A stretch of 64,000 nucleotides of DNA from IMGVR_UViG_3300032116_000004:251779-315778; one strand, 5' to 3'. Positions 954 to 55,297 are shown, counted from the stretch's first letter. Program-made: numbers and translations. The notes: generated from the letters alone by a model not told the origin.

Positions 954-2154
954 AATCTATCACTCGTGCTAACTCCGGCGCTATCTGTGAAAGGTTCTGA
1001 CGACGCCTTAGATCTAGATCTTTTATCTTTATCTTCAAAAGATTTCCATCAGTGCTGGCACCATTGATCATGAAATCTACCACGCGATCAAACTCAGATC
1101 GGAATGACTCGGGCACCCATTCACTTGACAATCTCTGTCGAACTGCCTGTTTAGCACGTTCGGGCAGGTTAGCAATACTGAAATAATAAGGATCATGCAA
1201 CATGTTCCAGTAGACAAAATCAAACTTTTGACGATCGATCCATTGTGCCACGTCTGACAGATACATCACGTTGAACGCATTGATGGTGCAACACACCTGT
1301 AGAGTGATGTTTGAAATCCTAGATCTCATCTGTCGGAACAGTTCGATATTGTGATTGATTTCCGACCAGCCAGCATTGCTACGTTGATATTCAAATCTCT
1401 CACCTACGTCATCCACAGAAAAAGCGATTTCAACATGCCGGAAATGGCACCAGATGTCTTCGGCTTCTTCGGGATATTGTGTGCCGTTGGTGTTGTAGTG
1501 TATTTCAATTTGATGAGCATATCCACGGTCTACCAGGCGGCGCAGTAGATCAAAATGCTCTCGGATCATGAAAGGTTCGCCACCAGTGAACTCAATGTAT
1601 CGGACTTGGGCCATGGCCGAATCCAGTTCGTGCCAAAACTGCTCGCTGTTGCGCGGCCATGCTCCATCACGTAACATTTGATAATGGAAACTTTTCTTTT
1701 TATCTTCTCTATCAACAATAAAGTTCAACTCTTCTGAAGCAAAAGTCGACGAAGACCATGAACCACAGATGCGGCATTTGAGATTACAGATATTACCTAA
1801 TTTGAGATCCAAAAACATCAAAGGTTTAGCATCTGCTGTCCAATTGTCAGAAATGCCCATATGTTTGAGCCTATCTAGAGTATGCATCCTTTTACTGGTA
1901 CGACCGGCACGTTCTTCTTGCCAACATCTACGACAGGTCTGTGGTTGCTGGCCATCTAAAAACTGCTGACGCAGATTTTTTAGATGTTGGCTGTTCTGTA
2001 TCTGGTCAAAGGTAGAGTTTGTAAGTTGGAATTTTTTCCCTTGATCATCTACTATCTCGTCCATGGCCAAACAGCAAGGTCTCACTGTGCCTATGGGACT
2101 GGTTTCTAAGCTAACCCACGGTAACACACAGAATTTCTCGTGTGGTATTTTCAT
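943..2154 (-). CDS. N-terminal twitch-domain radical SAM protein
   Basis: FCVLPW..RPCC..CRRCW twitch cysteines; CNLKCRIC; FTGGEPF; YNTNG. Confidence 0.93.
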   Translation of the reverse strand: MKIPHEKFCVLPWVSLETSPIGTVRPCCLAMDEIVDDQGKKFQLTNSTFDQIQNSQHLKNLRQQFLDGQQPQTCRRCWQEERAGRTSKRMHTLDRLKHMGISDNWTADAKPLMFLDLKLGNICNLKCRICGSWSSSTFASEELNFIVDREDKKKSFHYQMLRDGAWPRNSEQFWHELDSAMAQVRYIEFTGGEPFMIREHFDLLRRLVDRGYAHQIEIHYNTNGTQYPEEAEDIWCHFRHVEIAFSVDDVGERFEYQRSNAGWSEINHNIELFRQMRSRISNITLQVCCTINAFNVMYLSDVAQWIDRQKFDFVYWNMLHDPYYFSIANLPERAKQAVRQRLSSEWVPESFRSEFDRVVDFMINGASTDGNLLKIKIKDLDLRRRQNLSQIAPELARVIDYEV

Positions 2155-3419
2155 TGCAAGGCCTCCAGTTCGGGTATCACAGACAGCAGATTCTGTCCGC
2201 GGATGGCGTCTAGTTCGTGAGTCTTGCGCCAGAATACCTCCAGTAATTGAGTGTTATCTGACCCCATCATAAAATTGATAGCCGATTCAAAACCCACCGT
2301 GGCACGTTGCAAAGGATCTTGTGTTCTCAACCAATCAAGGTGCTCTTCAAAGCGTATCCTTAGACGTTGTTTGTATTTCATAGGTGCTATGTCTATTCTA
2401 TAGTGTGCTGGATCTTGCAAGATATTGACATTGAGATCCTGCGCACGTATCAGTCCTTGCTCTACCCAAGATTTATGAAAATCAGGTAGATGCCATGCGT
2501 TCATGATACTCAGCGTAGGAGAAATATAGAAATCTACGTTGGGGCAGATATCTATCATCCTACGACGATTATCTTCTACTGTGTTCCAATTGGTACCATT
2601 GCGTATGTATTCAGCACGCAAGTCCATGGCATCCAGGCTGGCTCCTACTGCTACACTCTTAAACTTTTTCCAATAGTCAAACACATATCGATCTTTGAGT
2701 TTGACTTGCGTGAAGTTTGTATTGTAGATCAGGCGCACATCAAATCGTTCTCTGCGTTCTAATTCTTCCAGGATGCGATAGTGCTCATCCATCATCAGAG
2801 GCTCGCCACCTGCAAAATATATCTGCTCTACATAATCAATATGCGGTAACAATTGGTTCCACATATCTTCGGGATCGCGACCTGCAATGTTCAAAGGTCT
2901 ATTGTGTTTGGCCCATTCAGGACCGGCTAACTTGATCTGATCTTGATACCATGAACTGGAAAAGATATGCCCACAACTGCGACAACTGAGATTGCAAAGA
3001 TTACTGAAACGTATATCCCAATAAGTCATCTCAAACGGATTGCTTTCTAATTTCTTGATGTGATGACCGTGATGTTTGTTGGCTGATCTCCGACCTGAAA
3101 AAAATCCCGATTCCTCTTGTTCATAGCATCGACCACAGGCCGGGTTGGGCCGTTCGGCTAACATGTCTTCTCGCAACTGTGTCATGGACGGACCTTGCCA
3201 AATTTCGGCCAAGGTATTCTTTCTGCAATCGCCCACTGGGTATCGCATCTCTGCATGACAGCAAGGATAGGCTTCACCTGTGGGATAAGCATGCAGGTGT
3301 ATCCAAGGATAGATACAGAATGTTTTGCTGTCTTTCAGCAGAAATTGTTCGCGATCGTTGAGATCCGTTGGTCGGACTAAATCTGCGGAATTATATTGAT
3401 ATTGTGTCATACCACTCAC
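2151..3419 (-). CDS. N-terminal twitch-domain radical SAM protein
   Basis: FCIYPW..YPCC..CGRCY; CNLSCRSC; FAGGEPL; SLDA. Confidence 0.93.
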   Translation of the reverse strand: MSGMTQYQYNSADLVRPTDLNDREQFLLKDSKTFCIYPWIHLHAYPTGEAYPCCHAEMRYPVGDCRKNTLAEIWQGPSMTQLREDMLAERPNPACGRCYEQEESGFFSGRRSANKHHGHHIKKLESNPFEMTYWDIRFSNLCNLSCRSCGHIFSSSWYQDQIKLAGPEWAKHNRPLNIAGRDPEDMWNQLLPHIDYVEQIYFAGGEPLMMDEHYRILEELERRERFDVRLIYNTNFTQVKLKDRYVFDYWKKFKSVAVGASLDAMDLRAEYIRNGTNWNTVEDNRRRMIDICPNVDFYISPTLSIMNAWHLPDFHKSWVEQGLIRAQDLNVNILQDPAHYRIDIAPMKYKQRLRIRFEEHLDWLRTQDPLQRATVGFESAINFMMGSDNTQLLEVFWRKTHELDAIRGQNLLSVIPELEALQ

Positions 3420-4749
3420 TCAATGCAGGAAAAGTCCTGCGGAAATTTTTGCCACGGCGCCGATCATATTGCTCGTAAAATTGTTTAAAATCGTTGTGCA
3501 ATCGCGGCATATCAAATGCATCTGAATGCGGAGTCTTGACCACGTCAAGATAATCTATCAATCGTTGCATGTGATTGCGTTCGTGTTCATGCATCATGAC
3601 ATTGTCAGTCCAGCGATCTAACCAGGCCTGCAATCGATCTCTATGACGCATACGGATGTGATCAGGCAAAACCAGTGGTGATTGGAAACTGGGAAATCTC
3701 AGGATGTTCAGCGTGAAGTTAGGAAAGTCCGAACCATGGTCCTGTTTCCATAACATGAGATAGGTCAGGAACTCTGGCAGGCTTTCCAGGCACAAGGCAT
3801 TAATGGTACACATCACATGCAAGCCTCGCAGTTTTTTACTCTGCATGATGCGTTCCATGTTGTCGGTCCACTGTCCATAGTTCAAACCATCGCGGATATA
3901 TTCAGCATGAGGACCGATGCTCTCATTGGAAGTATACAGATCCAGTTCTACATCTTCGCAGGCATTGATAGCACGTTCTATCACATCATATTCCATGCCA
4001 AGATTTGAGTTGATGGCCAGGCGTGTTTGCGAACGTCCGCGATTTTGTTGGAACCAATCCAACAACTTCCAGGTATATCCGCTCATCAGTGGTTCACCAC
4101 CGGTGATGCGCAGTTCTTTCAGTGTTCTATGTAGGTCTGATTCCCACCACTGGAAAAATGCGTCCACATAAGGATTCCGATCATTGAATGTATACAACTG
4201 ACTGCTGTCATGAGCGTGAGTGAAATGATTACGACCATCTGATACCAGGCCGGTGTAAGCACCGTGTTGTTTAATATCCCGAACCCATGTAGAACTAAAA
4301 GCAGGATTGCAATAAGAACAAGCGAACTGGCAAGTCCTATCAAAGGCGATTTCCAAGGTTTGTAAATCCACGTCTTGGTCCGCTGGAGTATGGTATGCAT
4401 CATCAAGGTCCTCGTCTGAATATATCACTGTCTTATACACACGGTCGCTGACGTTGTCTCGACCTATGTCTTCAATCTTCCAGCAGTATTCGCACCCTTG
4501 TGGGCGCTCGCCGCGTTGCATCATGCCTCGTTCGGATTTTTTTTTGGCAGTATTGTGCAAGGCTTTGGGATTGGCTTCTGCATCTTCTACGCTGACTTTG
4601 TGAGGCAGCGGGTGATGGCAACTGGTAGTCATGCCGGAGCCTAGCCAAATAGTAGCGTTATACCATTTGGCTCCACAAAAACTATCGGATTTGATATCGA
4701 TCACCCGACGTTTGTATTCAATATCTGTTTCGTTGTCTTTACGTGGCAT
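3391..4749 (-). CDS. radical SAM protein, N-twitch variant (C..W..SCHHP)
   Basis: FCGAKW..TSCHHP..CEYCW; CQFACSYC; ITGGEPL. Confidence 0.92.
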   Translation of the reverse strand: MPRKDNETDIEYKRRVIDIKSDSFCGAKWYNATIWLGSGMTTSCHHPLPHKVSVEDAEANPKALHNTAKKKSERGMMQRGERPQGCEYCWKIEDIGRDNVSDRVYKTVIYSDEDLDDAYHTPADQDVDLQTLEIAFDRTCQFACSYCNPAFSSTWVRDIKQHGAYTGLVSDGRNHFTHAHDSSQLYTFNDRNPYVDAFFQWWESDLHRTLKELRITGGEPLMSGYTWKLLDWFQQNRGRSQTRLAINSNLGMEYDVIERAINACEDVELDLYTSNESIGPHAEYIRDGLNYGQWTDNMERIMQSKKLRGLHVMCTINALCLESLPEFLTYLMLWKQDHGSDFPNFTLNILRFPSFQSPLVLPDHIRMRHRDRLQAWLDRWTDNVMMHEHERNHMQRLIDYLDVVKTPHSDAFDMPRLHNDFKQFYEQYDRRRGKNFRRTFPALSEWYDTISI

Positions 4750-5758
4750 GCATGAACTTTTGGAATTTTACAGTAAATGTTTTCTGTTGGTTAGTATGTA
4801 GTTCTTGGGCGTGCTGTTGGTTATATAAACAGATGTCTCGTGTTTCGATCCAAAATTGGTCTAGATCTTGATCGCATAACCACTGGACTTCTTGTATCAA
4901 TCTGTCCAGTCTCCCCTTACCATCTATTATAGTATCAAACGATTCATCGATCAACGATCCGAATGTTCTAAATCCCATGCGATGTAGGTCTCGATAGAAT
5001 CCCATGTTGGCACAAATAACAAAAGGATGTGCCGCTAATATTGGCTTGTAGGTTTTCTCTGTGCGGAAACTGTGCGGATATTCAAACACAGTTTCACTGA
5101 CTACGCTGAAGTAAGTGTCATTGAACTGTGGTGCATAGATCACGCCATCTAACCATGATGGTTCTGGTTGAATTTCATACCGTGATGGCAAAGATTTTTC
5201 GGATAAATCCATATGCTCAACATAGACTCTGTTGAAATCTCTATGCCCCCATGTATCATAGTTCTCTAGACAAGACCACAATGCTCGATCCAACAATCCA
5301 AAAAATTTCAATTTGGCGATCAAGTATTTCCTATGCGGACGCAGTTTTCGATTGGTAAAAAGAAATTTATAAGGTCGAGTAACCTGTTGGCTTAATACCA
5401 GGTTGGTTTCTTGGCTGCCGATAGTGGCCCGTAAAAAATGCTCGTTGTTGAGATTTTGTATATCCGGATCAGAATCACCGCCTGTTATCCATCTAAGAGA
5501 TCCTCTTTGGAACCATGTATAGTAGAGATGATGTTTGACTATGTGCCACTGAGTGGCCACTGATTCATCTGTTTTTTCTACAGCGATAGTGCTGCCATTT
5601 TCCAAACTCTTGATCACCAACTCTGGTCGCATAACCAGAGTCTTCAAGGATATAGCATAACACCCTTGTCGATCACTTAGATAGTCAACAACGATGTCAT
5701 CTGCTGTATCGAGATACCCAAGTGGCAGTCCAGGCTCAACAATAATATTACCATTCAT
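4739..5758 (-). CDS. putative glycosyltransferase with GT10 (alpha-1,3-fucosyltransferase)-like C-terminal motif
   Basis: YFSVVSET..FRTEKTYKPI..HPFV resembles the GT10 'ENS..YxTEK..P' motif; paralogous to 6111..7166 and 11545..12495. Confidence 0.55.
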   Translation of the reverse strand: MNGNIIVEPGLPLGYLDTADDIVVDYLSDRQGCYAISLKTLVMRPELVIKSLENGSTIAVEKTDESVATQWHIVKHHLYYTWFQRGSLRWITGGDSDPDIQNLNNEHFLRATIGSQETNLVLSQQVTRPYKFLFTNRKLRPHRKYLIAKLKFFGLLDRALWSCLENYDTWGHRDFNRVYVEHMDLSEKSLPSRYEIQPEPSWLDGVIYAPQFNDTYFSVVSETVFEYPHSFRTEKTYKPILAAHPFVICANMGFYRDLHRMGFRTFGSLIDESFDTIIDGKGRLDRLIQEVQWLCDQDLDQFWIETRDICLYNQQHAQELHTNQQKTFTVKFQKFMHAT

Positions 5759-6114
5759 GCCTGATTATCGCCTGGAACGATTCTATAATTGTCTTCCACA
5801 GAATCTGGTGTGCTGACTTCTATGATTGTTCCTGCTTCAATACAGATCAACTGATGAGGCTGGCAAGGTGGATTGTGCCAAGTTGCCCCTTCATTTAATT
5901 CTTTTTCATGAGATTCAGCGGTATCAGTATCTATCCAACGAATTAGAAATTTGCCATTTTGGACATACCAAGTTTCATCTTTGTCTCGATGGAAATGCAT
6001 ACTGAAGCGGGCACCGGTCTCAAAATTTAAAAACTTTGCACAATATTGGTTATTAGTTGCCCAAATAAATTCAGATCCCCATTTTTTAGGAACCAGTCCT
6101 GTCAATCTGGTCAT
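5755..6114 (-). CDS. cupin-fold sugar isomerase/epimerase (mannose-6-phosphate isomerase type II-like)
   Basis: KKWGSE..SMHFHRDKDETW..PPCQPHQL..IEVST cupin motifs. Confidence 0.75.
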   Translation of the reverse strand: MTRLTGLVPKKWGSEFIWATNNQYCAKFLNFETGARFSMHFHRDKDETWYVQNGKFLIRWIDTDTAESHEKELNEGATWHNPPCQPHQLICIEAGTIIEVSTPDSVEDNYRIVPGDNQA

Positions 6115-7166
6115 GATTCAAATACATGATGCATTTTGTGATATTGTTCACGACTAAACTCAATGAACCTTTCACGGTTATAGCGAAGATCGGGCAACAT
6201 ATCTTGATAGATGTCTTCGATCTCTGACAGAGTCATATCGCATAACCAATGTAATACACTCATCACACTACCATGCTGGTCCTCTGAGGTTTCTATATCA
6301 ACATGTGGCCAATAATGGTTAAATGTTTTAAATCCTCGATTACGCAACCATGGATATATCCTAGTCTGCCCATGTATGACAAAAGGTCTTAATCCAATCA
6401 TTGGTTTCCATGTTTTCTCAGTTACAAACAAGGGATGCCAATTGTTAAACTCTGTTTCGCTGACCACATGTAAAAAATGATTTTTCCACACAGTTAGAGG
6501 ACCTAGTCCAAACAAATCGCAAGGAATTCCACCACAGTCATCCTCTGTAATAAAATCATCTAAGTTCTCACCCAATGTTATGTTAGGGCCCATCATACCA
6601 TCAGCATAGATATCTGCATGTTCTTTTGATCCGCCACCTAAAGTAATGATTCCCCTACGATCAAGACGAGATGCCAATATAAGATTAGTGAGCTCCACAC
6701 GGTGTAGTCTTGGTTTGCGTTGTAGACAAACGAATACGTGTTTAACTGATTGAAGGCTGATTTGATCCAAAGTGGGTATGGTCATTAACTTATAGGCGGC
6801 TGCCGCGTGCCAATTCCATTGATACTTTTGATTTTCCCATGTGCCGATGCGTATTACTTTCTCGCACTTGATTTGATTGATAATACTATCTATTAGATCT
6901 TCGCGCAGATACACAGGATCGATTGTAGATAACAAAAACAAATTGTCAAATTTAGCGCAATCTTTGTAGATCAATTTTTCTAACTTTTGCCATTGTCCGT
7001 TATCAAACTGAGGACCAAACCAAGTCATATTCAATAATAAATTCTTTTCATCTTTGAACTTAGACTCAATTTGTTCTGCAGTCTTTTGCAATACTTCTCG
7101 TTCCAAAGGCCCATAGTGATAAGCAAGTGGGAACGTGGTTCCAATAACAGTTATCATGATAGACAA
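6111..7166 (-). CDS. putative GT10-like glycosyltransferase
   Basis: RKPRLHR..FLHVVSET..FVTEKTWKPMIGLRPFV..GFKTF. Confidence 0.55.
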   Translation of the reverse strand: MSIMITVIGTTFPLAYHYGPLEREVLQKTAEQIESKFKDEKNLLLNMTWFGPQFDNGQWQKLEKLIYKDCAKFDNLFLLSTIDPVYLREDLIDSIINQIKCEKVIRIGTWENQKYQWNWHAAAAYKLMTIPTLDQISLQSVKHVFVCLQRKPRLHRVELTNLILASRLDRRGIITLGGGSKEHADIYADGMMGPNITLGENLDDFITEDDCGGIPCDLFGLGPLTVWKNHFLHVVSETEFNNWHPLFVTEKTWKPMIGLRPFVIHGQTRIYPWLRNRGFKTFNHYWPHVDIETSEDQHGSVMSVLHWLCDMTLSEIEDIYQDMLPDLRYNRERFIEFSREQYHKMHHVFES

Positions 7167-8089
7167 TTTTGTTTATACCATTGGATTGTGATATCTATAC
7201 CCTGTGATAAATTATATTTTGGTTGCCACCCCATGGATTTTATTTTACTGTTGTCTAAAGTTCTAACAATAGTAGCTGTTGGTTTTGTGATATCCCATTG
7301 TATATCCCCTGCAAAACCAGATAAGTGCTTTACTAGATCGGCGGCAGTCTTAAGGTTAACTGGATTACCGGCAGAAAGATTTATTGGCTCACTGGCAGAA
7401 TAATTTTGCATACAAAAAATACAAGCGTCGGCAGCGTCGTCCACAAACATAAAATCTCTTACCTGACTTCCATCTCCCCAAAGAGATACTGCGGCGTCTT
7501 GACGTTTGACAGCATTGACAAATTTGCTTATAAAATCACTCATGACATGAGATTTGACATTATCAAAAGTATCGTTAGGCCCGTAAAGGTTACCGGGCAT
7601 CACTGTGATAAAATCACATCCCCATTGTTTTCTAAAATACTGAGCCATTTTGATCCCAGCAATTTTTGCCACGGCGTAGGCTTCGCTAATTGGTTCTAAA
7701 TATCCAGATAAAAGTTGATCTTCAGTGATAGGTATTTGACAGTCTTTGGGATAGGCAGAACTACTACCAGTAAACAAAAGTTTTTTACACTGATATTTGC
7801 GAGACACATCAAAAACATTGTTTTGTATTTCTAAGTTATACAGCATTGTTTCTCCCCAATCCTGACTCAAAAGTCCTATCAACTTAGCCGCTACTAAAAA
7901 TACATACTCTGGCCTATGCCGATTGAACCAAGCATCGACCTGTGTTTTATTTCTCAGATCTAATTCTTCGGGACTAGGATATAGTATGTTAGTATATCCT
8001 TGTGATCGTAATTGTCTCACTATAGCCGATCCAAGGTGTCCACGAAATCCACCTGCTACAAATATTTTAGACTGTTTTTCCATGTTCAT
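7154..8089 (-). CDS. fcl: GDP-L-fucose synthase (Fcl)-like extended SDR, GDP-4-keto-6-deoxysugar reductase
   Basis: KIFVAG..GSAIVR, ELDLR, VFLVAAK, YAVAK, PGNLYGPNDTF..SHV, WGDGSQVRDF; GSSSAY in place of the canonical GSSCIY. Confidence 0.85.
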   Translation of the reverse strand: MNMEKQSKIFVAGGFRGHLGSAIVRQLRSQGYTNILYPSPEELDLRNKTQVDAWFNRHRPEYVFLVAAKLIGLLSQDWGETMLYNLEIQNNVFDVSRKYQCKKLLFTGSSSAYPKDCQIPITEDQLLSGYLEPISEAYAVAKIAGIKMAQYFRKQWGCDFITVMPGNLYGPNDTFDNVKSHVMSDFISKFVNAVKRQDAAVSLWGDGSQVRDFMFVDDAADACIFCMQNYSASEPINLSAGNPVNLKTAADLVKHLSGFAGDIQWDITKPTATIVRTLDNSKIKSMGWQPKYNLSQGIDITIQWYKQNCLS

Positions 8090-9081
8090 CTGTCCTGATT
8101 GTCGTAATAAATTATCTGACTACCTAGATATTCAAATAAAATTGGCACACTGGTCAATCCTAGTGCCTCTTCAACTTTTTGTTTGGCATCCAGCGGTGTG
8201 ACAAAAAGCATAAATCCACCACCGCCTGCCCCCAACAACTTACCTCCCAGAGCTCCTGCTGTTAGAGCACGATCATATATTTCATCAATTTTCTGATTGG
8301 TCGATTCGGGCTGTATTGCCTTTTTTAGAATCCATTGTTCGTTTAGAGCCTCGGCAAAGTCTGTCAGTCTGTTTTGATTTGCATCAAACAATATACTCTG
8401 CGCTCGATCAGTTAAAGCATTCATATCCTGCAATTTTTTTTCTTGTTGCCCAAGTAAAGCAATAGTTTTTTTCGCTAACTGACCGCTCTCTCTGCAATCT
8501 TGTGTATGAAACATCTGCATTGATGATTCCAATTCTCGGTGTATGCCAGAATCAAGTATCAAGGGATTGACCGTAAAATCTTGATGTCCACCAAAATTGA
8601 TTTTATTGAAACCACCAAATGCGGCGGCCACCTGATCTTGGCTACCCACATCTTGTTTCAAAACTTTCTGCTCGATATACAAGGCATCTAATGCTAACTG
8701 ACGTTTAGTCTTGAGTTGATTAGTCAAGGTATAGAGACCGTGTAGAAGACCTACTGTGAAACTACTGCTAGAACCTATGCCTGTGCGATTAGGCAAATCT
8801 CCGTGATGTGTAATATCGATACCAAAATCAATATTACAAAACTTCAAACATTCTCTGATCACAGGAATAGATATTTCATCTATGGAATTGGTTTCTTGTA
8901 CCTCATAATATCTTATGCGATATTTGTAATCAAACACTTGAGGCAATTTCCTAATAACAATAAAACTATATTTGTTAATAGTGGTGCTGATTACTGATCC
9001 CGGATGATACTCATACCAATCTGGATAGTCGGTCATGCCTCCGAAAAAACTTACTCTATAAGGAGTTCTAACTATGATCAT
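8086..9081 (-). CDS. hddA: GHMP sugar kinase, D-glycero-alpha-D-manno-heptose-7-phosphate kinase-like
   Basis: RTPYRVSFFGGMTD, DLPNRTGIGSSS, GSQDQVAAAFGG, GGKLLGAGGGGF. Confidence 0.85.
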   Translation of the reverse strand: MIIVRTPYRVSFFGGMTDYPDWYEYHPGSVISTTINKYSFIVIRKLPQVFDYKYRIRYYEVQETNSIDEISIPVIRECLKFCNIDFGIDITHHGDLPNRTGIGSSSSFTVGLLHGLYTLTNQLKTKRQLALDALYIEQKVLKQDVGSQDQVAAAFGGFNKINFGGHQDFTVNPLILDSGIHRELESSMQMFHTQDCRESGQLAKKTIALLGQQEKKLQDMNALTDRAQSILFDANQNRLTDFAEALNEQWILKKAIQPESTNQKIDEIYDRALTAGALGGKLLGAGGGGFMLFVTPLDAKQKVEEALGLTSVPILFEYLGSQIIYYDNQDR

Positions 9082-10091
9082 CTTATCAAATAATTTTTAT
9101 TGATCTCGTTAACCTTCTCTCGCCAATGGTCTAGTAGATCTTGCATGGTCCGATCAAAGGTAATTTCCGGTTTCCATCCAGTATGCTTACGAAATTTTTC
9201 TGTGTTTGGTATCTGGAGATCTGCATCTATTGGACGCAATCGGTCAAGGTCGACTTCTACCCGTATGCTGTCCTGACAGGCACTTAATGATATTAACTTA
9301 TCAAGGATATCCTGCACTCGGCATACATGCGTGCCTCCTATGTTGTAATATTCTCCAGGGACAGGATTTACGGTAACAAGCATAAGATAAGCTCGCACAG
9401 CATCTCTGACATCAGCAACAGTCCGTAAACTATCAAGATTGCCCACCTTGACAACAGGTTCTATTTTACCTTTTTCAATCATAGCGATCTGTTTGGCAAA
9501 AGATGATTCAGCAAACACATCTCCGCGACGCGGACCGGTATGTGTGAACATTCTAGTGGTCATGACTTTTAATCCGTATGCTTCGGCATAAAATCTTCCC
9601 AACAAGTCTGTACCAACCTTGCTAATAGCATATGGCGAGGCTGGATGAAAAGTGCAATTTTCATCTATAGGAAGTTTTTCTTTAGGAACTCGACCAAATA
9701 CTTCTGAACTAGCACAAACATGTATTATTGCGTCAGGACAGTGAATTTTACATGCTTCTAACAATCTTGCTGTGCCTTGGATGTTAGTGTTAAGAGTTTC
9801 TACAGGACTATCAAAACTAGTCTTTGGAAAACTTTGTGCCGCAAGGTGGAAAACATAATCGGGCTTTGAATTTTTTATGATTTTTTGCAATGACGGATCA
9901 TCATTTAAATCACCATACTCGAGCATGATGCGTTTTTTTTGATTTATATCGGGGATCAAATGATTGATGTTGTCAAGAGGACTCCGCCATCTTATTACAC
10001 CAACAATATTCCAGTCAGTTTCTTTAAGGATCAGATCGGCTAGATGGCTTCCGACCATGCCTGTGATTCCGGTGATAAGTGCAGTAGTCAT
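9078..10091 (-). CDS. dmhA: GDP-sugar 4,6-dehydratase, GDP-manno-heptose dehydratase (DmhA/WcbK)-like
   Basis: ALITGITGMVGSHL, FHLAAQSFPKTSF, SSEVFG, ASPYAISK, THTGPRRGDVF, RLRPIDAD; as recalled, these match the heptose-type subfamily rather than canonical Gmd. Confidence 0.82.
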   Translation of the reverse strand: MTTALITGITGMVGSHLADLILKETDWNIVGVIRWRSPLDNINHLIPDINQKKRIMLEYGDLNDDPSLQKIIKNSKPDYVFHLAAQSFPKTSFDSPVETLNTNIQGTARLLEACKIHCPDAIIHVCASSEVFGRVPKEKLPIDENCTFHPASPYAISKVGTDLLGRFYAEAYGLKVMTTRMFTHTGPRRGDVFAESSFAKQIAMIEKGKIEPVVKVGNLDSLRTVADVRDAVRAYLMLVTVNPVPGEYYNIGGTHVCRVQDILDKLISLSACQDSIRVEVDLDRLRPIDADLQIPNTEKFRKHTGWKPEITFDRTMQDLLDHWREKVNEINKNYLIR

Positions 10092-10112
10092 TTTGCTTGG
10101 TTAATATATAAT

Positions 10113-11561
10113 TTATTGTTTGATTAATTGCTTGGCTAGATATCCACAATCGGCCCACCATTCGACCATTTCTGGGAATACTTTGAGAAATCTCGTGCCG
10201 CGGCGTCGGTCATGTTCATCGAAAAATCGGAACCAATCCGCACGCTGACGGCGCACATAATCAGGATCTAGTTTCTTTCCTTCTCGCATCCACGCGATGT
10301 CTCTATCCAATCTCTGTAGTTCGTAATCTTTAAAGCCTTTGAATCGTCGTTCTTCGGTTTCGAGATTTTTCATCATGAAAACCCAAACTTCTTCCAGTTT
10401 GTCTGCGTAACTTTCGGGCAAGATCTGCAGGCTCTGCCAGGCTGGATTTCTCAACACAGGAGTATCGAACCAAACACGCTGATAAGTGTTAGAATAGATC
10501 TGTCTTAATCCCAACATCCCTACCATGAGTTCCTGGAAACTAGTCACTGACAAGTTGTTCATGGTTATGATAAATGTGATGGAACTGCGATGTGGTATTT
10601 CAGTGAGGAATTGATTCACACGATCCCATAACAGGGCAAAATCCATACCATGCCGTATATACTCGGCACGGTCCATCCAAGCATCAAGGCTCACATACTG
10701 CATGAAATGCTCCACACGCTCGTTGTCGCAGATCATTTTCACATAACCTTTGTAGCGTTGCCAAAGACGTTCGTCGGCACAGAAGTTTGATGTTACATTA
10801 AGATGCAGTCGCGGATTGTGATGAGCCATCACATAGTCAAACACTTTATAAGTGTTCTTGTCCATCATAGGCTCGCCGCCGGTCATACGGAAATGTTCTA
10901 GTTCCGGATACAGCGCAGGCCACCACTGCCAAAATGCTTCAAGATAGGGATTGTGTTCACGAAAAGGTATGGGTTTGCGATCTCCTTGGAAGTAAGCAGG
11001 ATCGTTATGAGGTGTAGCAGTGGGCCAGGCGCCGTGACGTTCTGCTTCTTCCATCCAGGACGTAGAAAATTGTGGACTGCAATAACTACATTTGAGATTG
11101 CAAACAGAATTGAAATTGACTTCCACATAACTAGGAGTGACATCTTGGTCCCATGGCGCGGTCACTATCTTTTCAAAATCACGAGCCGCCCAGGGTTCTC
11201 CGGATCTGTAATGACGATCCGACATTTCTCCGAGATCTTCCATGTTCCAACAATACTGACATTCGCCCGGGCGTGTGCCTTCTAACATCAATCGGCGTTG
11301 CTGTTTTTTGTGTTCAGTATTGTGGATACCCGATGGACTGCGTTGTATGTCCTCGATGCGTATTTTGTGCAACGGAGGATGATAGCAGGAATTGGTATGG
11401 CCAGTGGTGAGATGTAAACTGACTTGTTTCCACTTGGCCAAACAAAGACTAGAACTTACAGTATCGAGTTTTTGTTTGATTATTTCTGCATCACTTAAGA
11501 ATTTTGACTTGAAGTCTTGTAATACTTCATCGCCTTTGTTTTGTTCAGACAATATTGACAA
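10113..11561 (-). CDS. radical SAM protein, N-twitch variant (C..W..SCYHP)
   Basis: LCLAKW..NSCYHP..CQYCW; CNLKCSYC; MTGGEPM. Confidence 0.92.
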   Translation of the reverse strand: MSILSEQNKGDEVLQDFKSKFLSDAEIIKQKLDTVSSSLCLAKWKQVSLHLTTGHTNSCYHPPLHKIRIEDIQRSPSGIHNTEHKKQQRRLMLEGTRPGECQYCWNMEDLGEMSDRHYRSGEPWAARDFEKIVTAPWDQDVTPSYVEVNFNSVCNLKCSYCSPQFSTSWMEEAERHGAWPTATPHNDPAYFQGDRKPIPFREHNPYLEAFWQWWPALYPELEHFRMTGGEPMMDKNTYKVFDYVMAHHNPRLHLNVTSNFCADERLWQRYKGYVKMICDNERVEHFMQYVSLDAWMDRAEYIRHGMDFALLWDRVNQFLTEIPHRSSITFIITMNNLSVTSFQELMVGMLGLRQIYSNTYQRVWFDTPVLRNPAWQSLQILPESYADKLEEVWVFMMKNLETEERRFKGFKDYELQRLDRDIAWMREGKKLDPDYVRRQRADWFRFFDEHDRRRGTRFLKVFPEMVEWWADCGYLAKQLIKQ

Positions 11562-12495
11562 TCTCCGTTGAATACTTTTGATCTAGCAGAAGATTGTAGT
11601 TATGATCTAGAATAGATTGCATATCCTGATACATGTGATACAATTCTGACTTAGATTTTTTGACCAAGTCATCAATGAGTTTTAGTGTTGATTGCAATCT
11701 ATCTTTGGTATCAAACCCATCATAGTCTTCGTTCCAAAAATTCCAAAATGTCTTAAACCCCATCTGCCGTAGATACTCTAGATAATTCCGGCTGGCAAAA
11801 ACAATAAATGGTTTTTTCATCCACATCGGTCTAAAAGTCTTTTCGGTAGCATAAAAAGTTTCCCCTGACACATGTGATTCAACTACCACATCAACTAGAA
11901 TATTTTTATAGTAATTTGTCAGCGGATCTGAAAAATCATAACCTTCACTGTCAGTGTATCTATCTGGACTAGACAACAACAAAGGAAGATCATCAATCAA
12001 CACACTGGCGTCTTTGACACTTTCAATGCGATAAGATAATAGTTTGTCAAATTCAAAATGCACCAAATCATCCACACCGGTATTAGCCGAGAAATGTATC
12101 AGGCTTTTACGGCCGTGATAGCGTCTTAAATGTCCTGCAATAGCCAGTCGAGCCGCTGTGGGTCTCCCAAACAATGCATAGAAGACATGCGTTTGATCCC
12201 AAGAATGCATGCTGTTATCTATGGATTCAATTTTTTTTGGCCAGTGATTTTCTAAAAATTTTATATGATAATAAGGATGTGATTCCAATGGATTGGCCGT
12301 GATAACAGTAACATTTTTATGTTCCATGGATTCTAATAATCGATAAACTCCCAAAGTTTTCATGCTCACAGCTTCGGGGGCCACAGTAATCTCAATCGGA
12401 AGACCTTGATTAGCAAACAAAAATCTAACAAATTCATCTTTGTTCCAAAACTTATCACTGGTTGCAAGGATCTGGAAAGATACTGTCATTACCAC
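11545..12495 (-). CDS. putative GT10-like glycosyltransferase
   Basis: VDVVVES..YATEKTFRPM..KPFI..GFKTF..EDYD. Confidence 0.55.
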   Translation of the reverse strand: MVMTVSFQILATSDKFWNKDEFVRFLFANQGLPIEITVAPEAVSMKTLGVYRLLESMEHKNVTVITANPLESHPYYHIKFLENHWPKKIESIDNSMHSWDQTHVFYALFGRPTAARLAIAGHLRRYHGRKSLIHFSANTGVDDLVHFEFDKLLSYRIESVKDASVLIDDLPLLLSSPDRYTDSEGYDFSDPLTNYYKNILVDVVVESHVSGETFYATEKTFRPMWMKKPFIVFASRNYLEYLRQMGFKTFWNFWNEDYDGFDTKDRLQSTLKLIDDLVKKSKSELYHMYQDMQSILDHNYNLLLDQKYSTEIVNIV

Positions 12496-13418
12496 CCCTC
12501 TTGTCGTCGGATCACATCAATCTCACGTGTCATTACGCCGAGATTCTGCCAGTTAGATCTGTAATGATCCTTGAAAAATGCGCTCTGGAACGGGGGCATG
12601 AACGCCATGGGTAATCCCAATTGTGTGCTCAATGGATCGGTATAAAAATCAATCACCCCTGCTGGGTCTTGTTCAGCCACTGTGGATTCCCATATCGTTT
12701 TTAGAGTATCAAACCACTGCACTTCTCGATAGTCCCAGTCAGAAAGCATGGTCATGTATGTGCCTTGACGGGCACCGGCTATGGCCCAAAATCCATTTTC
12801 AACATCGCAGCCTATGTTGTGCCATATCGTGAGATGATCGAAATTGCGTTTATGCACACGATCCTTGAATTCACTCACTGTGGGACGGCGCCCACGATCC
12901 AGGCACATCTTGACGCCTTCTCGGAACCCTGCACGCCAGGCATGGAATGGTGATCCATTGGGATAGGTTGTTGAATAGCAATCATGCATGGGCCAATACA
13001 GTGGATCAAAGCAGAATTCTACCACTGTTTCGTCTCGCCCATCTGTGGATTCATGGGTTTTCATGTTGAGAACGAAATCTCGGGTCCACGAACTCAACCC
13101 ACCGTTGCCATACATCAGACCATTGACATGATTGCGAGCACGCCACCGCAACACAGCACGCTCCCATGATTCATCTGGAAATTCCAGTGTGAGATTGAAA
13201 AAGTTTTCTTGGGGAAGATTGTCTCCATCTATCAAGATGAAACGCTCGGTTTCTGATGCGTCGGCTGCGGCCTTGTGTGCGGCATCTGATCCTTTGACGC
13301 TGTCCACACGTTTGGCCCAGGGGACCATGTTGCGTATTTTGACCCAAAATTCTTCTTTGAGAGGCTCGTCATAGGACAGGTAGACGACGTCAAGATCTGC
13401 TATATCAACTTTCTTCAT
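12489..13418 (-). CDS. putative GT-A fold glycosyltransferase
   Basis: DVVYLSYDEP..AAHKAAA..FILIDGDN (DxD)..YGNGG..AWRAGFREGVK; glycosylation-gene context. Confidence 0.55.
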   Translation of the reverse strand: MKKVDIADLDVVYLSYDEPLKEEFWVKIRNMVPWAKRVDSVKGSDAAHKAAADASETERFILIDGDNLPQENFFNLTLEFPDESWERAVLRWRARNHVNGLMYGNGGLSSWTRDFVLNMKTHESTDGRDETVVEFCFDPLYWPMHDCYSTTYPNGSPFHAWRAGFREGVKMCLDRGRRPTVSEFKDRVHKRNFDHLTIWHNIGCDVENGFWAIAGARQGTYMTMLSDWDYREVQWFDTLKTIWESTVAEQDPAGVIDFYTDPLSTQLGLPMAFMPPFQSAFFKDHYRSNWQNLGVMTREIDVIRRQEGW

Positions 13419-44710: not shown

Positions 44711-44738
44711 TTGACAAAGATGCCAAATGTTGTATAAT
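44711..44738 (+). promoter_or_regulatory. consensus sigma70 promoter for the gp55 operon
   Basis: TTGACA-16 nt-TATAAT, then GGAGA SD and ATG 44766. Confidence 0.85.
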
Positions 44739-44765
44739 AACTACAATATAGGAGAATCATCAACG

Positions 44766-54188: not shown

Positions 54189-54421
54189 TAGAAGAATGCC
54201 ATTCCGGTTTTTTTAGTGGTCTCGAGATTTTCTTTGATCAATGCACCCACAGATTCTCGCTCACCAAAACTGAGATTGAGTGCTTCTTCATAGGTCAGGC
54301 CTCCTCGCATATACCAACACATCTTGAATATGTCGTCTTTGATTGCTTTGACTTCACGATCATATCCTTCTACTATTTTGGTGATGCGCTCAGGACTCGA
54401 GGTCAGGAGGCGGATACGAAA
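54188..54421 (-). CDS. gp51-like tail/hub assembly chaperone segment, probably expressed by -1 frameshift from the gp26-like gene
   Basis: WYMRGGLTYEEALNLSFGER..IKEN; no convincing start of its own; slippery AAATTTTTTC at the overlap. Confidence 0.7.
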   Translation of the reverse strand, partial: FRIRLLTSSPERITKIVEGYDREVKAIKDDIFKMCWYMRGGLTYEEALNLSFGERESVGALIKENLETTKKTGMAFF

Positions 54422-55251: not shown

Positions 55252-55262
55252 ATTTGGGCACC

Positions 55263-55286
55263 ATAAATAATTGATACAATACTTAT
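55263..55286. promoter_or_regulatory. overlapping bidirectional late promoter pair
   Basis: TAAATA (+, 55264-55269) and TAAGTA (-, 55285-55280), 10 nt apart, between divergent genes. Confidence 0.6.
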
Positions 55287-55297
55287 CGGCGTAGATA

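What the first reader, a model, noticed from the sequence alone, without database searches (positions are those of the whole stretch)
5755..10091. Phage-encoded GDP-6-deoxyheptose pathway rather than GDP-fucose
Seen: adjacent DmhA-like dehydratase (AAQSFPKTSF, THTGPRRGDVF, RLRPIDAD), HddA-like kinase, Fcl-like reductase, a GT10-like gene and a cupin. Known: HddA plus DmhA/WcbK plus a reductase (with or without a cupin epimerase) makes GDP-6-deoxyheptoses for Campylobacter and Burkholderia capsules and Yersinia pseudotuberculosis O-antigen. GmhA, GmhB and HddC are absent from this window. Inference: the phage diverts host heptose-7-phosphate into a rare sugar for its own transferases. Automated annotation would probably call these genes gmd/fcl.
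Basis: partly seen in the sequence, partly recalled or inferred. Interest (0 to 1): 0.7.

Follow-up and report, generated by a model that had tools for sequence, protein, structure and literature searches.

The report
Phage 6-deoxyheptose sugar gene cluster
An uncultivated 316-kb T4-like jumbo phage carries an operon that most likely makes a rare GDP-activated 6-deoxy-heptose, not GDP-fucose, and transfers it with its own glycosyltransferases; the pathway is incomplete by the bacterial rule book, and a small mannose-phosphate-isomerase-like cupin may replace the usual first enzyme.

Summary
All five genes and all three quoted motifs lie at 5755-10091 on the minus strand.

- **Dehydratase:** it is DmhA-type, not Gmd. 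It scores 359 bits against the C. jejuni GDP-heptose 4,6-dehydratase 7US5 and at most 141 bits against Gmd. In a tree it falls in a 98/97-supported clade apart from Gmd. Of 79 bacterial loci with 66-74 % identical homologues, most also carry hddA, hddC/gmhB and gmhA.
- **Kinase:** it is HddA-like.
- **Reductase:** it is Fcl-like, but the epimerisation cysteine (GFS Cys109) is Ser111 here. The sister phage has Cys.
- **"GT10-like" gene:** it has a confident GT-B fold and belongs to a virus-only family with at least 10 paralogues in this genome. GT10 membership is not shown.
- **Cupin:** it is not an RmlC-type epimerase. It resembles the isomerase domain of type II PMI/GMP enzymes.
- **Cupin context:** in 80 phage loci it sits with heptose kinase, nucleotidyltransferase and HldD-like SDR genes, never with GmhA. 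I infer that it is the sedoheptulose-7-phosphate isomerase.
- **Missing steps:** the whole genome lacks GmhA, GmhB and HddC homologues. It does hold two HldC-like nucleotidyltransferases, one of them fused to a PMI cupin.

No biochemistry exists. The sugar size (C7 or C6), its stereochemistry and the acceptor are inferred.

The parts
9078..10091 (-). [quoted passage not shown]
   Evidence: PDB phmmer gives 7US5 at 358.8 bits and E 2.5e-106 (about 58 % identity over 326 aa), against Rmd 2PK3 at 193 bits and Gmd at 141 bits or less. GxxGxxG, SSE and YxxxK are present. In the ML tree it lies in a 98/97 clade with heptose-context bacterial and cyanophage enzymes, apart from the Gmd clade.
8086..9081 (-). 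[quoted passage not shown]
   Evidence: Pfam GHMP_kinases_N and _C. The best NCBIfam model is HddA at 126 bits, below its equivalog cut-off of 600. The four best PDB matches are heptose kinases 3K85, 4USK/4USM (WcbL) and 4N3O at 107-111 bits, against fucokinase at 34-38 bits. A kinase next to a 73 % identical bacterial dehydratase scores 281 bits against it.
7154..8089 (-). Fcl/GFS-like GDP-4-keto-6-deoxy-sugar 4-reductase, 311 aa; the epimerisation Cys is replaced by Ser111 (codon TCT at 7757-7759)
   Evidence: NCBIfam Fcl scores 315 bits against a cut-off of 500. PDB matches are GDP-fucose synthases at 197-236 bits and C. jejuni heptose reductases 7ANH at 211 and 7M13 at 185 bits. Aligned to E. 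coli Fcl, S107, Y136, K140 and H179 are kept and C109 becomes S. The sister phage has TGC (Cys), and three further contigs of this phage have TCT.
6111..7166 (-).
   Evidence: No Pfam hit even at E 10. The AF2 model has pLDDT 93.4 and pTM 0.92. Foldseek and VIA-align find GT-B enzymes at Z about 10: T4 BGT, phage HY126 GT, GtfC and the GT10 FucTs 2NZX, FUT9 and 7YRO. The nearly invariant E250-K251 lies in a ...SET...(T/S)EK... motif. In the Atlas the family is Uroviricota-only, and the nearest Pfam-named clusters are PF00852 at a score of only 0.80.
5755..6114 (-). Small metal-type cupin, type II PMI-like, 119 aa; proposed sedoheptulose-7-P isomerase (GmhA analogue)
   Evidence: Cupin_2 only; there is no RmlC (PF00908) or FdtA hit. 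It matches phrog_7851. The AF2 model has pLDDT 90.6. The top 17 AFDB-SwissProt matches are the C-terminal PMI cupins of AlgA, XanB and ManC, with TM 0.80 and rmsd 1.4-1.5 A for the closest. hhalign against E. coli CpsB residues 364-466 gives probability 95.4 %.
4739..5758 (-). Paralogue of the GT-B glycosyltransferase, 339 aa
   Evidence: It aligns in A1 and shares the C-terminal motif. It matches the same phage GT-like family as L029_356.
11545..12495 (-). Second paralogue of the GT-B glycosyltransferase, 316 aa
   Evidence: It aligns in A1 and matches L029_356.
12489..13418 (-). Virus-only protein that the Atlas names 'Glycosyltransferase 2-like' (probable GT-A), 309 aa; 94 % identical in the sister phage
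   Evidence: No Pfam hit. Atlas feature hits score 0.99 to Uroviricota clusters named GT2-like.
10113..11561 (-). N-terminal-twitch radical SAM protein, first gene of the sugar block; role unknown
   Evidence: NCBIfam NF033640 at 305.7 bits against a cut-off of 170.
943..4749 (-). Three tandem N-terminal-twitch radical SAM paralogues (3391-4749, 2151-3419, 943-2154) that end the operon; role unknown
   Evidence: NF033640 at 297, 391 and 343 bits. The same order is kept in the sister phage.

Best explanation
The block 943-13418 on the minus strand is a phage glycan-synthesis operon whose sugar-nucleotide core most likely makes a GDP-activated 6-deoxy-heptose.

Proposed route:
1. Sedoheptulose-7-P is isomerised to D-glycero-D-manno-heptose-7-P. 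I infer this is done by the PMI-like cupin (5755-6114); otherwise host GmhA does it.
2. The HddA-like GHMP kinase (8086-9081) phosphorylates C1. This rests on homology.
3. The 7-phosphate is removed by an enzyme with no candidate in the phage, presumably host GmhB or another phosphatase.
4. A nucleotidyltransferase activates the sugar. It is either a host HddC/ManC-type enzyme or one of the two phage HldC-like enzymes encoded outside the window. This step is open.
5. The DmhA-type dehydratase (9078-10091) makes the GDP-4-keto-6-deoxy-heptose. This is the best-supported step.
6. The Fcl-like enzyme (7154-8089) reduces C4. With Cys109 replaced by Ser it may do little or no 3,5-epimerisation, so the product could be a D-manno/D-talo or partly epimerised 6-deoxy-heptose rather than the L-galacto form.
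7. The three GT-B paralogues and a GT-A-like protein transfer the sugar to an unknown acceptor.

The operon runs in the same direction as the baseplate, giant-protein and tailspike-like genes without a break. A virion or host-surface glycan is therefore the likeliest target, but this is inference.
For: Dehydratase:
- It scores 359 bits against 7US5, 193 against Rmd and at most 141 against Gmd.
- The ML tree puts it in a 98/97 clade apart from the 100/100 Gmd clade of E. coli, P-SSM2 and S-SKS1.
- 79 bacterial loci hold 66-74 % identical homologues. Within 8 kb of them, HddC/GmhB occurs in 55, HddA-like kinase in 52, SIS GmhA in 34 and an Fcl-like SDR in 33. In about 23 loci the kinase directly follows the dehydratase, as in the phage.

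Kinase:
- The best NCBIfam and PDB matches are heptose kinases.

Precedents:
- Cultured cyanophages Bellamy and SynMITS9220M01 carry the order kinase-cupin-HddC-like NT-SDR-dehydratase, with a 53-54 % identical dehydratase.

Cupin:
- Its structure and profile match type II PMI cupin domains.
- Of 80 viral loci with its closest homologues, a PfkB heptose-type kinase is present in 54, an HldC-like NT in 53, an HldD-like SDR in 55, a HAD in 25 and SIS GmhA in 0.
- The 79 bacterial loci show the reverse pattern, with SIS in 34 and the cupin in 0.
- Bellamy, a 100 %-complete viral genome (G002) and this phage have no GmhA.
- This phage also fuses an HldC-like NT to a PF01050 PMI cupin.

Conservation:
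- The operon is conserved in a sister phage at 56-94 % protein identity.
Against: - No enzyme here has been assayed.
- No GmhB-like phosphatase and no NTP_transferase-family guanylyltransferase could be found in the 316-kb record. The record is only 91 % complete, so the pathway as written needs host or unrecognised enzymes.
- The only phage nucleotidyltransferases are HldC-like. In bacteria these use ATP and the beta-anomer, whereas HddA makes the alpha-anomer.
- The kinase and the reductase both score below the NCBIfam equivalog cut-offs (126 against 600; 315 against 500).
- A PMI-like isomerase, an Fcl-like reductase and fucosyltransferase-like GTs would also fit a hexose (mannose/fucose) route.
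- The C. jejuni heptose epimerases and reductases accept GDP-mannose-derived substrates in vitro (PMC7949155).
- The cupin also resembles the CapF/WbuC sugar-nucleotide epimerase cupins, though less well.
Confidence: 0.72

Rival explanations
1. Hexose route. The cupin is a plain mannose-6-P isomerase. The kinase and a phosphatase bypass phosphomannomutase. The dehydratase acts on GDP-mannose and the Fcl-like enzyme makes GDP-L-fucose or another GDP-6-deoxy-hexose, which fucosyltransferase-like GTs transfer. This is the default automated reading (gmd/fcl).
For: The cupin's best structural and profile matches are PMI domains. The reductase's best PDB matches are named GDP-fucose synthases. GT10 fucosyltransferases are among the best fold matches. 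C. jejuni heptose-pathway enzymes accept GDP-mannose-derived substrates in vitro (PMC7949155). JGI names close homologues GDPmannose 4,6-dehydratase.
Against: The dehydratase is 58 % identical to the characterised heptose enzyme and about 30 % to Gmd, and it lies outside the Gmd clade. Its close bacterial homologues are linked to gmhA, hddA and hddC, not to manB or manC. The kinase matches heptose kinases three times better than fucokinase. Phages that do make GDP-fucose (P-SSM2, S-SKS1, S-SCSM1) carry true Gmd-clade genes. The cupin's catalytic Gln of the PMI motif is His.
Confidence: 0.12
2. The main pathway is as proposed, but the cupin is a metal-dependent C3 (or C3/C5) epimerase acting on the GDP-4-keto-6-deoxy-heptose, like the CapF C-terminal or WbuC cupins. 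It would make up for the reductase's lost epimerisation Cys. Heptose-7-P would then come from host GmhA.
For: There is a weak WbuC-family HMM hit (TIGR04366, E 2e-4). CapF cupin domains are among the PDB fold matches, with TM 0.77. The reductase has Ser at the Cys109 position. The cupin lies in the same operon as the dehydratase and reductase.
Against: PMI cupins fit clearly better (TM 0.80 and rmsd 1.4-1.5 A, against rmsd 2.7-2.9 A for CapF). In 80 viral loci the cupin travels with the kinase, NT and HldD-like SDR. A DmhA-type dehydratase was found in only 2 and another dehydratase-family SDR in 3, so in most loci no 4-keto substrate would exist. The sister phage keeps Cys in the reductase yet also keeps the cupin. 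The NT-PMI cupin fusion in the same genome points to an early-pathway role.
Confidence: 0.2
3. Hybrid nucleotide route. The phage's own HldC-like nucleotidyltransferases (G000:C1:28635-29402 and 201224-201742) activate the heptose-1-P made by the GHMP kinase. The pathway would then need only a phosphatase from the host, and the activated sugar may not be the canonical GDP-alpha form.
For: The genome has exactly one heptose-type kinase (GHMP), no PfkB kinase and no NTP_transferase-family enzyme, but two HldC-like NTs, one fused to a PMI cupin. The 172-aa NT is related to the NTs of the phage kinase-cupin-NT modules.
Against: The NT genes lie 60-230 kb from the operon. Bacterial HldC enzymes use the beta-1-phosphate and ATP, and HddA makes the alpha-anomer. 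The dehydratase is closely similar to a GDP-specific enzyme. The related cyanophage modules pair this dehydratase with an HddC-like NT.
Confidence: 0.15

Closest known systems
GDP-6-deoxy-heptose pathways of Campylobacter jejuni capsules (GmhA, HddA, GmhB, HddC, 4,6-dehydratase, epimerases, C4-reductases), Yersinia pseudotuberculosis DmhA/DmhB and Burkholderia WcbK/WcbL
   Same: The dehydratase lineage is the same (about 58 % identity to 7US5). The GHMP heptose kinase is of the same kind (WcbL and HddA are the best structures). The Fcl-like C4-reductase is of the same kind, with a precedent for a bifunctional epimerase/reductase that gives 6-deoxy-L-galacto-heptose.
   Different: The carrier is a phage. 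It has no SIS GmhA, HAD GmhB or HddC anywhere in the record. It has no RmlC-like epimerase and carries a PMI-like cupin instead. The reductase has a Ser/His dyad in place of Cys/His. The transferases are virus-only GT-B proteins. Four twitch radical SAM genes flank the block.
Heptose modules of T4-like cyanophages (Synechococcus phages Bellamy gp215-219 and SynMITS9220M01 gp196-200)
   Same: They share a GHMP kinase, the same small cupin family (phrog_7851), an SDR reductase and a DmhA-type dehydratase (53-54 % identity) inside a glycan island of a T4-like phage.
   Different: The cyanophages also encode an HddC-like nucleotidyltransferase and a short HAD protein. Their reductase is a short RmlD-like SDR, not Fcl-like. 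The gene order differs. Their dehydratases are annotated only as 'NAD-dependent epimerase/dehydratase'.
GDP-L-fucose pathway Gmd + Fcl (E. coli colanic acid; cyanophages P-SSM2, S-SKS1, S-SCSM1)
   Same: The two-step chemistry is the same (4,6-dehydration, then reduction at C4), both enzymes are SDRs, and the reductase is 36-40 % Fcl-like.
   Different: The dehydratase lies outside the Gmd clade. A heptose kinase is present. The Fcl epimerisation Cys is missing.
Type II phosphomannose isomerase domain of AlgA/XanB/ManC, and monofunctional 'viral MPI' genes (PMC9602691)
   Same: The cupin has the same fold. The S-x-(Q/H)-x-H...E...H metal and substrate motif is aligned at hhalign probability 95 %.
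   Different: The cupin is 119 aa and stands alone. The motif Gln is His. It lies inside heptose kinase/nucleotidyltransferase modules that lack GmhA, which suggests a C7 rather than a C6 ketose-phosphate substrate.

Membership tests
[quoted passage not shown] | Extended SDR with GxxGxxG, a catalytic S/T-x-E and YxxxK | tested here: met
   GITGMVGS, SSE and YAISK are in the translation and align with 7US5.
[quoted passage not shown] | Closer to a characterised heptose dehydratase than to Gmd or Rmd; separate clade from Gmd | tested here: met
   359 bits against 193 and at most 141. The tree shows a 98/97 clade, and the Gmd clade is 100/100 elsewhere. The tree holds no C. jejuni, Yersinia or Burkholderia sequence because none could be fetched by reference.
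[quoted passage not shown] | Genomic linkage with gmhA, hddA, gmhB and hddC | tested here: met
   For bacterial homologues the counts are 55, 52 and 34 of 79 loci. In the phage only the kinase is linked.
[quoted passage not shown] | Kinetic preference for GDP-heptose over GDP-mannose | not testable with these tools
   This needs an enzyme assay.
HddA (D-glycero-D-manno-heptose-7-P 1-kinase, GHMP) | GHMP N and C domains; the best relatives are heptose kinases | tested here: met
   Pfam. PDB 3K85, 4USK and 4N3O score 107-111 bits, with the next hit at 41.
HddA (D-glycero-D-manno-heptose-7-P 1-kinase, GHMP) | NCBIfam equivalog cut-off (NF049969, 600 bits) | tested here: not met
   126 bits. Cyanophage Bellamy's kinase also falls short at 279 bits. 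It works like HddA, but strict equivalog membership is not shown.
GDP-L-fucose synthase (Fcl/GFS) | S107-Y136-K140 reduction triad | tested here: met
   Aligned with E. coli Fcl.
GDP-L-fucose synthase (Fcl/GFS) | Cys109/His179 epimerisation dyad (PMC7949155) | tested here: not met
   The phage has Ser111 and His (codon TCT at 7757-7759). The sister phage has Cys.
GDP-L-fucose synthase (Fcl/GFS) | NCBIfam equivalog cut-off (NF047922, 500 bits) | tested here: not met
   315 bits.
Glycosyltransferase family 10 (alpha-1,3/4-fucosyltransferases) | Match to PF00852 or PF17039 | tested here: not met
   No Pfam family at E up to 10 for any of the three paralogues. A family profile finds no PDB sequence.
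Glycosyltransferase family 10 (alpha-1,3/4-fucosyltransferases) | GT-B fold with GT10 as the clearly best structural relative | tested here: inconclusive
   The GT-B fold is certain (pLDDT 93). GT10 structures score Z 9.4-9.8, no better than T4 BGT, HY126 GT or GtfC at Z 9.8-10.0. The Atlas PF00852 leads score only 0.80.
RmlC-like C3/C5 epimerase (C. jejuni heptose epimerases) | dTDP_sugar_isom (PF00908) cupin of about 180 aa without a metal site | tested here: not met
   Only Cupin_2 and Cupin_1 hits; 119 aa; an HxH...E...H metal motif. True RmlC-like genes occur in 9 of the bacterial loci and are not related to it.
Type II phosphomannose isomerase cupin domain | Fold and profile similarity to the C-terminal domain of ManC, AlgA and XanB | tested here: met
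   The top 17 AFDB-SwissProt matches have TM of about 0.8. hhalign gives 95.4 % to CpsB 364-466.
Type II phosphomannose isomerase cupin domain | S-x-Q-x-H...R motif residues (PMC9602691) | tested here: inconclusive
   Ser, His and Glu are kept, the Gln is His, and the Arg is displaced (SMHFHRDKDETW against SVQMHHHRAEHW). PF01050 is not reported for this protein.
GmhA (sedoheptulose-7-P isomerase) | SIS fold | tested here: not met
   The protein is a cupin, so the proposal is functional analogy only. No SIS protein is found in the genome.

The most novel reading that the evidence does not exclude
The 119-aa PMI-like cupin is a non-orthologous sedoheptulose-7-phosphate isomerase that replaces GmhA in phage heptose-nucleotide modules. 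It occurs both in ADP-heptose-like modules (PfkB kinase, HldC-like NT, HldD-like SDR) and in GDP-6-deoxy-heptose-like modules (GHMP kinase, DmhA). If so, much of the abundant 'viral mannose-6-phosphate isomerase' signal in aquatic viromes would report phage heptose glycan synthesis, not rewiring of central carbon metabolism. This jumbo phage would also run a hybrid pathway that joins a GHMP kinase with HldC-like nucleotidyltransferases.
Probability: 0.45. Interest if true: 0.75.

Novelty: new variant of a known kind. Interest (0 to 1): 0.56.

Why it matters
6-Deoxy-heptoses are rare sugars, known so far from a few bacterial capsules and O-antigens. If a jumbo phage makes one and transfers it with a private, expanded family of glycosyltransferases, phages can build their own unusual glycans, probably on virions or on the infected cell surface. 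That bears on host recognition, superinfection exclusion and immune recognition.

There is a practical point too. Thousands of metagenomic genes now labelled 'GDP-mannose 4,6-dehydratase' and 'mannose-6-phosphate isomerase' may be mislabelled.

The cupin observation gives a directly testable candidate for a new, analogous first enzyme of heptose biosynthesis.

Tried and rejected
- **DNA search:** a DNA-level search of the cluster against GenBank phages found nothing.
- **Reference sequences for the tree:** C. jejuni, Yersinia and Burkholderia reference sequences could not be brought in by reference. The PDB scores stand in for them.
- **Papers not held:** the 7US5 structure paper and the bifunctional epimerase/reductase paper are not in the library, so residues that contact C7 could not be checked. 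The dehydratase review does not mention heptose enzymes.
- **Missing pathway genes:** GmhA, GmhB and HddC were sought in the whole genome with Pfam and NCBIfam families and with my own HMMs built from the bacterial neighbourhoods. All searches were negative.
- **GT10 by sequence:** a family profile of the GT against PDB sequences gave nothing, and a lenient Pfam search also gave nothing.
- **Late promoter:** the T4 late-promoter motif TATAAATA is not enriched, with 1 hit against 1.2 expected, so timing of expression could not be inferred.
- the first cupin alignment held a row from an annotated GenBank locus that the structure tool does not accept. I rebuilt the alignment without that row.
- **RmlC/FdtA reading rejected:** there is no family hit for the cupin, and it has a metal motif.
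- **Fucokinase reading rejected:** the kinase scores 34-38 bits against fucokinase and 107-111 bits against heptose kinases.

Full report
**Setting**

The window is the last 64 kb of a 315,778-bp IMG/VR virus record that CheckV rates 91 % complete. It is a T4-like jumbo phage. It has a gp55-like late sigma factor (44727-45653), gp47/gp46 homologues, a baseplate wedge protein and a gp23-like capsid protein. The capsid protein is 63-67 % identical to those of PA5oct-like Pseudomonas phages, Sinorhizobium phage Phosso, and Vibrio and Yersinia jumbo phages. No tRNA gene lies in the window.

From about 44695 down to 943, nearly all genes are on the minus strand with abutting or overlapping ends. 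In order they are:
- the baseplate genes;
- a 4,835-aa ORF;
- a Peptidase_G2 tailspike-like protein;
- several unknown ORFs;
- the sugar block.

**The observation**

- Pfam and NCBIfam give GDP_Man_Dehyd/Epimerase for 9078-10091, GHMP kinase for 8086-9081, Epimerase (Fcl-like) for 7154-8089 and Cupin_2 for 5755-6114.
- They give nothing for 6111-7166.

The same gene order is kept in a sister phage on contigs of 90 and 244 kb, with protein identities of 56-94 %. Three further IMG/VR contigs carry a dehydratase identical to this phage's and near-identical versions of the neighbouring genes.

**Dehydratase**

| PDB match | Bits |
|---|---|
| 7US5 (C. jejuni heptose dehydratase) | 358.8 |
| 2PK3 (reductase Rmd) | 193 |
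| Every true Gmd | 141 or less |

The printed alignment shows about 58 % identity to 7US5.

A maximum-likelihood tree of 45 sequences places the phage enzyme in a clade of 28 with 98/97 support. That clade also holds cyanophage enzymes and bacterial enzymes whose neighbours are heptose genes. E. coli Gmd and the Gmd genes of cyanophages P-SSM2 and S-SKS1 form a separate 100/100 clade across long branches. No characterised C. jejuni, Yersinia or Burkholderia sequence could be put in the tree, so the PDB scores carry that link.

The family is strikingly conserved. Eighty species genomes from many phyla hold homologues 66-74 % identical to the phage protein. ORFs were recovered for 79 of these loci. 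Within 8 kb of the homologue I found:

| Neighbour | Loci (of 79) |
|---|---|
| HddC and/or GmhB homologue (often fused) | 55 |
| HddA-like GHMP kinase | 52 |
| SIS-type GmhA | 34 |
| Fcl-like SDR | 33 |
| RmlC-like epimerase | 9 |

In about 23 loci the kinase gene directly follows the dehydratase gene, as in the phage. One example is a Proteobacteria MAG with dehydratase, kinase, an RmlC-like gene and a nearby HddC-HAD fusion.

**Kinase**

- The best NCBIfam model is HddA, at 126 bits. This is far below the equivalog cut-off of 600, and the next model is fucokinase at 61 bits.
- The four best solved structures are all heptose kinases: 3K85, WcbL (4USK/4USM) and 4N3O at 107-111 bits. Fucokinase scores 34-38 bits.
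- The kinase beside the bacterial dehydratase in the MAG scores 281 bits against it, and other bacterial cluster kinases score up to 398 bits.

It works like HddA, but strict equivalog membership is not shown.

**Reductase**

The protein is Fcl-like. NCBIfam gives 315 bits against a cut-off of 500. PDB GDP-fucose synthases score 197-236 bits, and the C. jejuni heptose reductases 7ANH and 7M13 score 211 and 185 bits.

Aligned to E. coli Fcl fetched from K-12, it keeps Ser107, Tyr136, Lys140 and His179. It has Ser at the position of Cys109 (GSSSAYP against GSSCIYP).
- In GFS, Cys109 and His179 are the base and acid for both epimerisations.
- DdahC (Thr/His) and MlghC (Tyr/Arg) are reductases without epimerase activity (PMC7949155).
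- The codon is TCT at 7757-7759 in this phage and in three other assemblies of it. The sister phage has TGC.
- Most Fcl-like genes in the bacterial heptose loci keep Cys and His.

My reading is that the lineage's ancestral product is probably the fucose-like 6-deoxy-L-galacto-heptose. In this phage the stereochemistry is uncertain. From memory, not checked here, the C109S mutant of E. coli GFS was reported to release a C3-epimerised, prematurely reduced product.

**The 'GT10-like' gene**

The 351-aa protein has no Pfam match even at E 10, and a family profile finds no PDB sequence. An exhaustive HMMER search found 2,858 representative relatives.

An AlphaFold model built from 68 of them is confident, with pLDDT 93.4 and pTM 0.92. 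It has a GT-B fold.
- Foldseek's significant matches mix GT4-type enzymes with the GT10 fucosyltransferases of H. pylori and mango.
- VIA-align gives Z of about 10 for T4 beta-glucosyltransferase, phage HY126 GT, GtfC, H. pylori FucT, human FUT9 and mango FUT13 alike.

The nearly invariant Glu250-Lys251, inside a ...SET...(T/S)EK... stretch, recalls the GT10 donor-binding motif. That is a resemblance, not a test.

The family is virus-only in the ESM Atlas, and some members are fused to a GDP_Man_Dehyd-type SDR. Two paralogues lie in the operon (4739-5758 and 11545-12495). At least seven more ORFs elsewhere in the genome match the same family. The neighbouring 309-aa ORF is named GT2-like in the Atlas.

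**The cupin**

It is not RmlC-like. It is 119 aa, gives Cupin_2 hits only, and has an HxH...E...H metal motif. It belongs to phrog_7851, which is annotated 'cysteine dioxygenase'. Its relatives are 70-80 % identical across thousands of metagenomic proteins that JGI calls 'mannose-6-phosphate isomerase-like'.

Structure and profile:
- The AlphaFold model has pLDDT 90.6.
- Its 17 best Swiss-Prot matches are all the C-terminal isomerase cupin of type II PMI/GMP enzymes (AlgA, XanB, ManC), with TM 0.78-0.82 and rmsd 1.4-2.5 A.
- In the PDB, which has no such domain, the matches are oxalate decarboxylase, KdgF, lyxose isomerase and the CapF cupin.
- hhalign of the family profile against E. coli CpsB gives probability 95.4 % over residues 364-466. 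The PMI motif is aligned, but its Gln is His.

Context is the telling part:
- In cyanophage Bellamy the order is GHMP kinase (HddA model, 279 bits), cupin, HddC-like nucleotidyltransferase, SDR, DmhA-type dehydratase.
- Bellamy's gene annotated 'phosphoheptose isomerase' is in fact a short HAD_PNKP-like protein.
- In other phage contigs the cupin sits between a PfkB kinase and an HldC-like nucleotidyltransferase, followed by an HldD-like SDR and near a GT9 heptosyltransferase.

| Gene found | 80 viral loci with the closest cupin homologues | 79 bacterial dehydratase loci |
|---|---|---|
| PfkB kinase | 54 | not sought |
| HldC-like NT | 53 | not sought |
| HldD-like SDR | 55 | not sought |
| HAD | 25 | not counted separately |
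| SIS GmhA | 0 | 34 |
| Small cupin | 79 | 0 |

The viral counts are, and the bacterial counts.

Bellamy, a 100 %-complete 186-kb viral genome (G002) and this phage have no GmhA at all. SynMITS9220M01 has one, but in a second, separate heptose module.

This complementary pattern, together with the PMI-like fold, leads me to infer that the cupin is the aldose-ketose isomerase of phage heptose modules. It would act on sedoheptulose-7-P, a reaction chemically parallel to fructose-6-P to mannose-6-P.

The literature reads monofunctional viral 'MPI' genes as central-carbon auxiliary genes (PMC9602691). I could not tell how far that set overlaps this family.

The rival reading, a CapF/WbuC-like epimerase of the 4-keto sugar, fits less well. 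Most cupin-bearing loci have no 4,6-dehydratase.

**Missing steps**

The whole record has no match to any of the following:
- NTP_transferase, NTP_transf_3, SIS_2 or gmhA;
- Histidinol-ppas, HAD_PNKP, HAD_2, Hydrolase_like or PfkB;
- HMMs that I built from the bacterial GmhA, HddC and GmhB neighbours;
- the cyanophage or MAG proteins, by phmmer.

It does have two HldC-like (cytidylyltransferase-fold) proteins.
- One is 172 aa, at G000:C1:201224-201742.
- The other is 255 aa, at 28635-29402. Its C-terminal half is a bona fide PF01050 PMI cupin at 79 bits.

The phage therefore has one heptose-type kinase (GHMP), two PMI-like cupins and two HldC-like nucleotidyltransferases, but no recognisable 7-phosphatase. 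Whether the HldC-like enzymes feed this pathway or the host supplies HddC/ManC and GmhB cannot be decided here.

**Acceptor and wider context**

The genome holds further sugar loci:
- SDRs, DegT aminotransferases, methyltransferases and a GT1-like gene at 182-196 kb;
- an SDR, a DegT gene and a carbamoyltransferase just upstream of the window.

The heptose block is co-directional and continuous with the baseplate, giant-protein and tailspike-like genes. This resembles the glycosyltransferase-rich host-recognition regions described in pelagimyophages (PMC7029224). A virion or host-surface glycan is the likeliest target. DNA glycosylation with heptose is known for other phages and is not excluded.

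The four N-terminal-twitch radical SAM genes in the operon have no assigned role.

**Novelty**

- Heptose genes have been listed in a cyanophage genome note (PMC7378029), and rfaE-like genes have been reported in pelagimyophages.
- I found no paper that assigns a DmhA-type GDP-6-deoxy-heptose branch to a phage.
- The homologous cyanophage genes are annotated only as epimerase/dehydratase.

I rate this a new variant of a known kind.

**Verdict**

The core of the finding is right and well supported by homology, phylogeny and context. The sugar's exact identity, the source of two pathway steps and the acceptor remain open.

Noticed in passing
G000:C1:28635-29402 (outside the window; locus L113:1483-2250): A 255-aa fusion of an HldC-like cytidylyltransferase-fold domain (PF01467; TIGR02199 at 1e-19) with a canonical type II PMI cupin (PF01050, 79 bits). 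It is flanked by a methyltransferase and a 2OG-Fe(II) oxygenase-like ORF. A second, 172-aa HldC-like gene lies at 201224-201742.
   Followed up: partly
window 943-4749 and 10113-11561 (minus strand): Four paralogous N-terminal-twitch radical SAM genes (NF033640, 297-391 bits) bracket the sugar genes, and the sister phage keeps them. Their substrate is unknown; it could be a sugar, a glycan or a protein.
   Followed up: no
window 45668-46816 and 47831-49321 (plus strand): Two more radical SAM-like genes (phrog_14086). One is inserted between the gp47-like (46818-47834) and gp46-like (49331-51094) recombination nuclease genes, which are normally adjacent.
   Followed up: no
window 18979-33486 (minus strand): A single 4,835-aa ORF lies between the baseplate genes and the glycan block. 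The sister phage has a 4,844-aa version with faint CBM_5_12 and FG-GAP hits. It may be a fibre or an acceptor of glycosylation.
   Followed up: no
whole genome, e.g. G000:C1:23281-24366, 82177-83475, 205498-206523, 222469-223776, 240675-241862, 245510-247761: At least seven further ORFs match the same virus-only GT-B family as 6111-7166. This is an unusually large paralogue expansion for a phage.
   Followed up: partly
L001:4680-4988 (Synechococcus phage Bellamy gp212): The gene annotated 'phosphoheptose isomerase' matches HAD_PNKP/PNK3P phosphatase models and not SIS, so it is probably the GmhB-like step. Bellamy has no SIS GmhA anywhere in its genome.
   Followed up: yes
L007 (G000:C1:178000-197999) and L008 (232000-251999): Additional nucleotide-sugar loci are present: three more SDR dehydratase/epimerase genes, two or three DegT aminotransferases (one apparently split at L007:7388-7987), several methyltransferases, GTP cyclohydrolase I and a carbamoyltransferase.
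   Followed up: partly
window 54403-56112 (minus) and 55298-57676 (plus): Two long ORFs on opposite strands overlap by about 800 bp, so at most one is likely to be a real gene.
   Followed up: no
tree; locus L111: The nearest bacterial dehydratase to the phage pair is from a Pelagibacteraceae single-cell genome (support 94/95). This is a weak hint about the donor or host lineage only.
   Followed up: no
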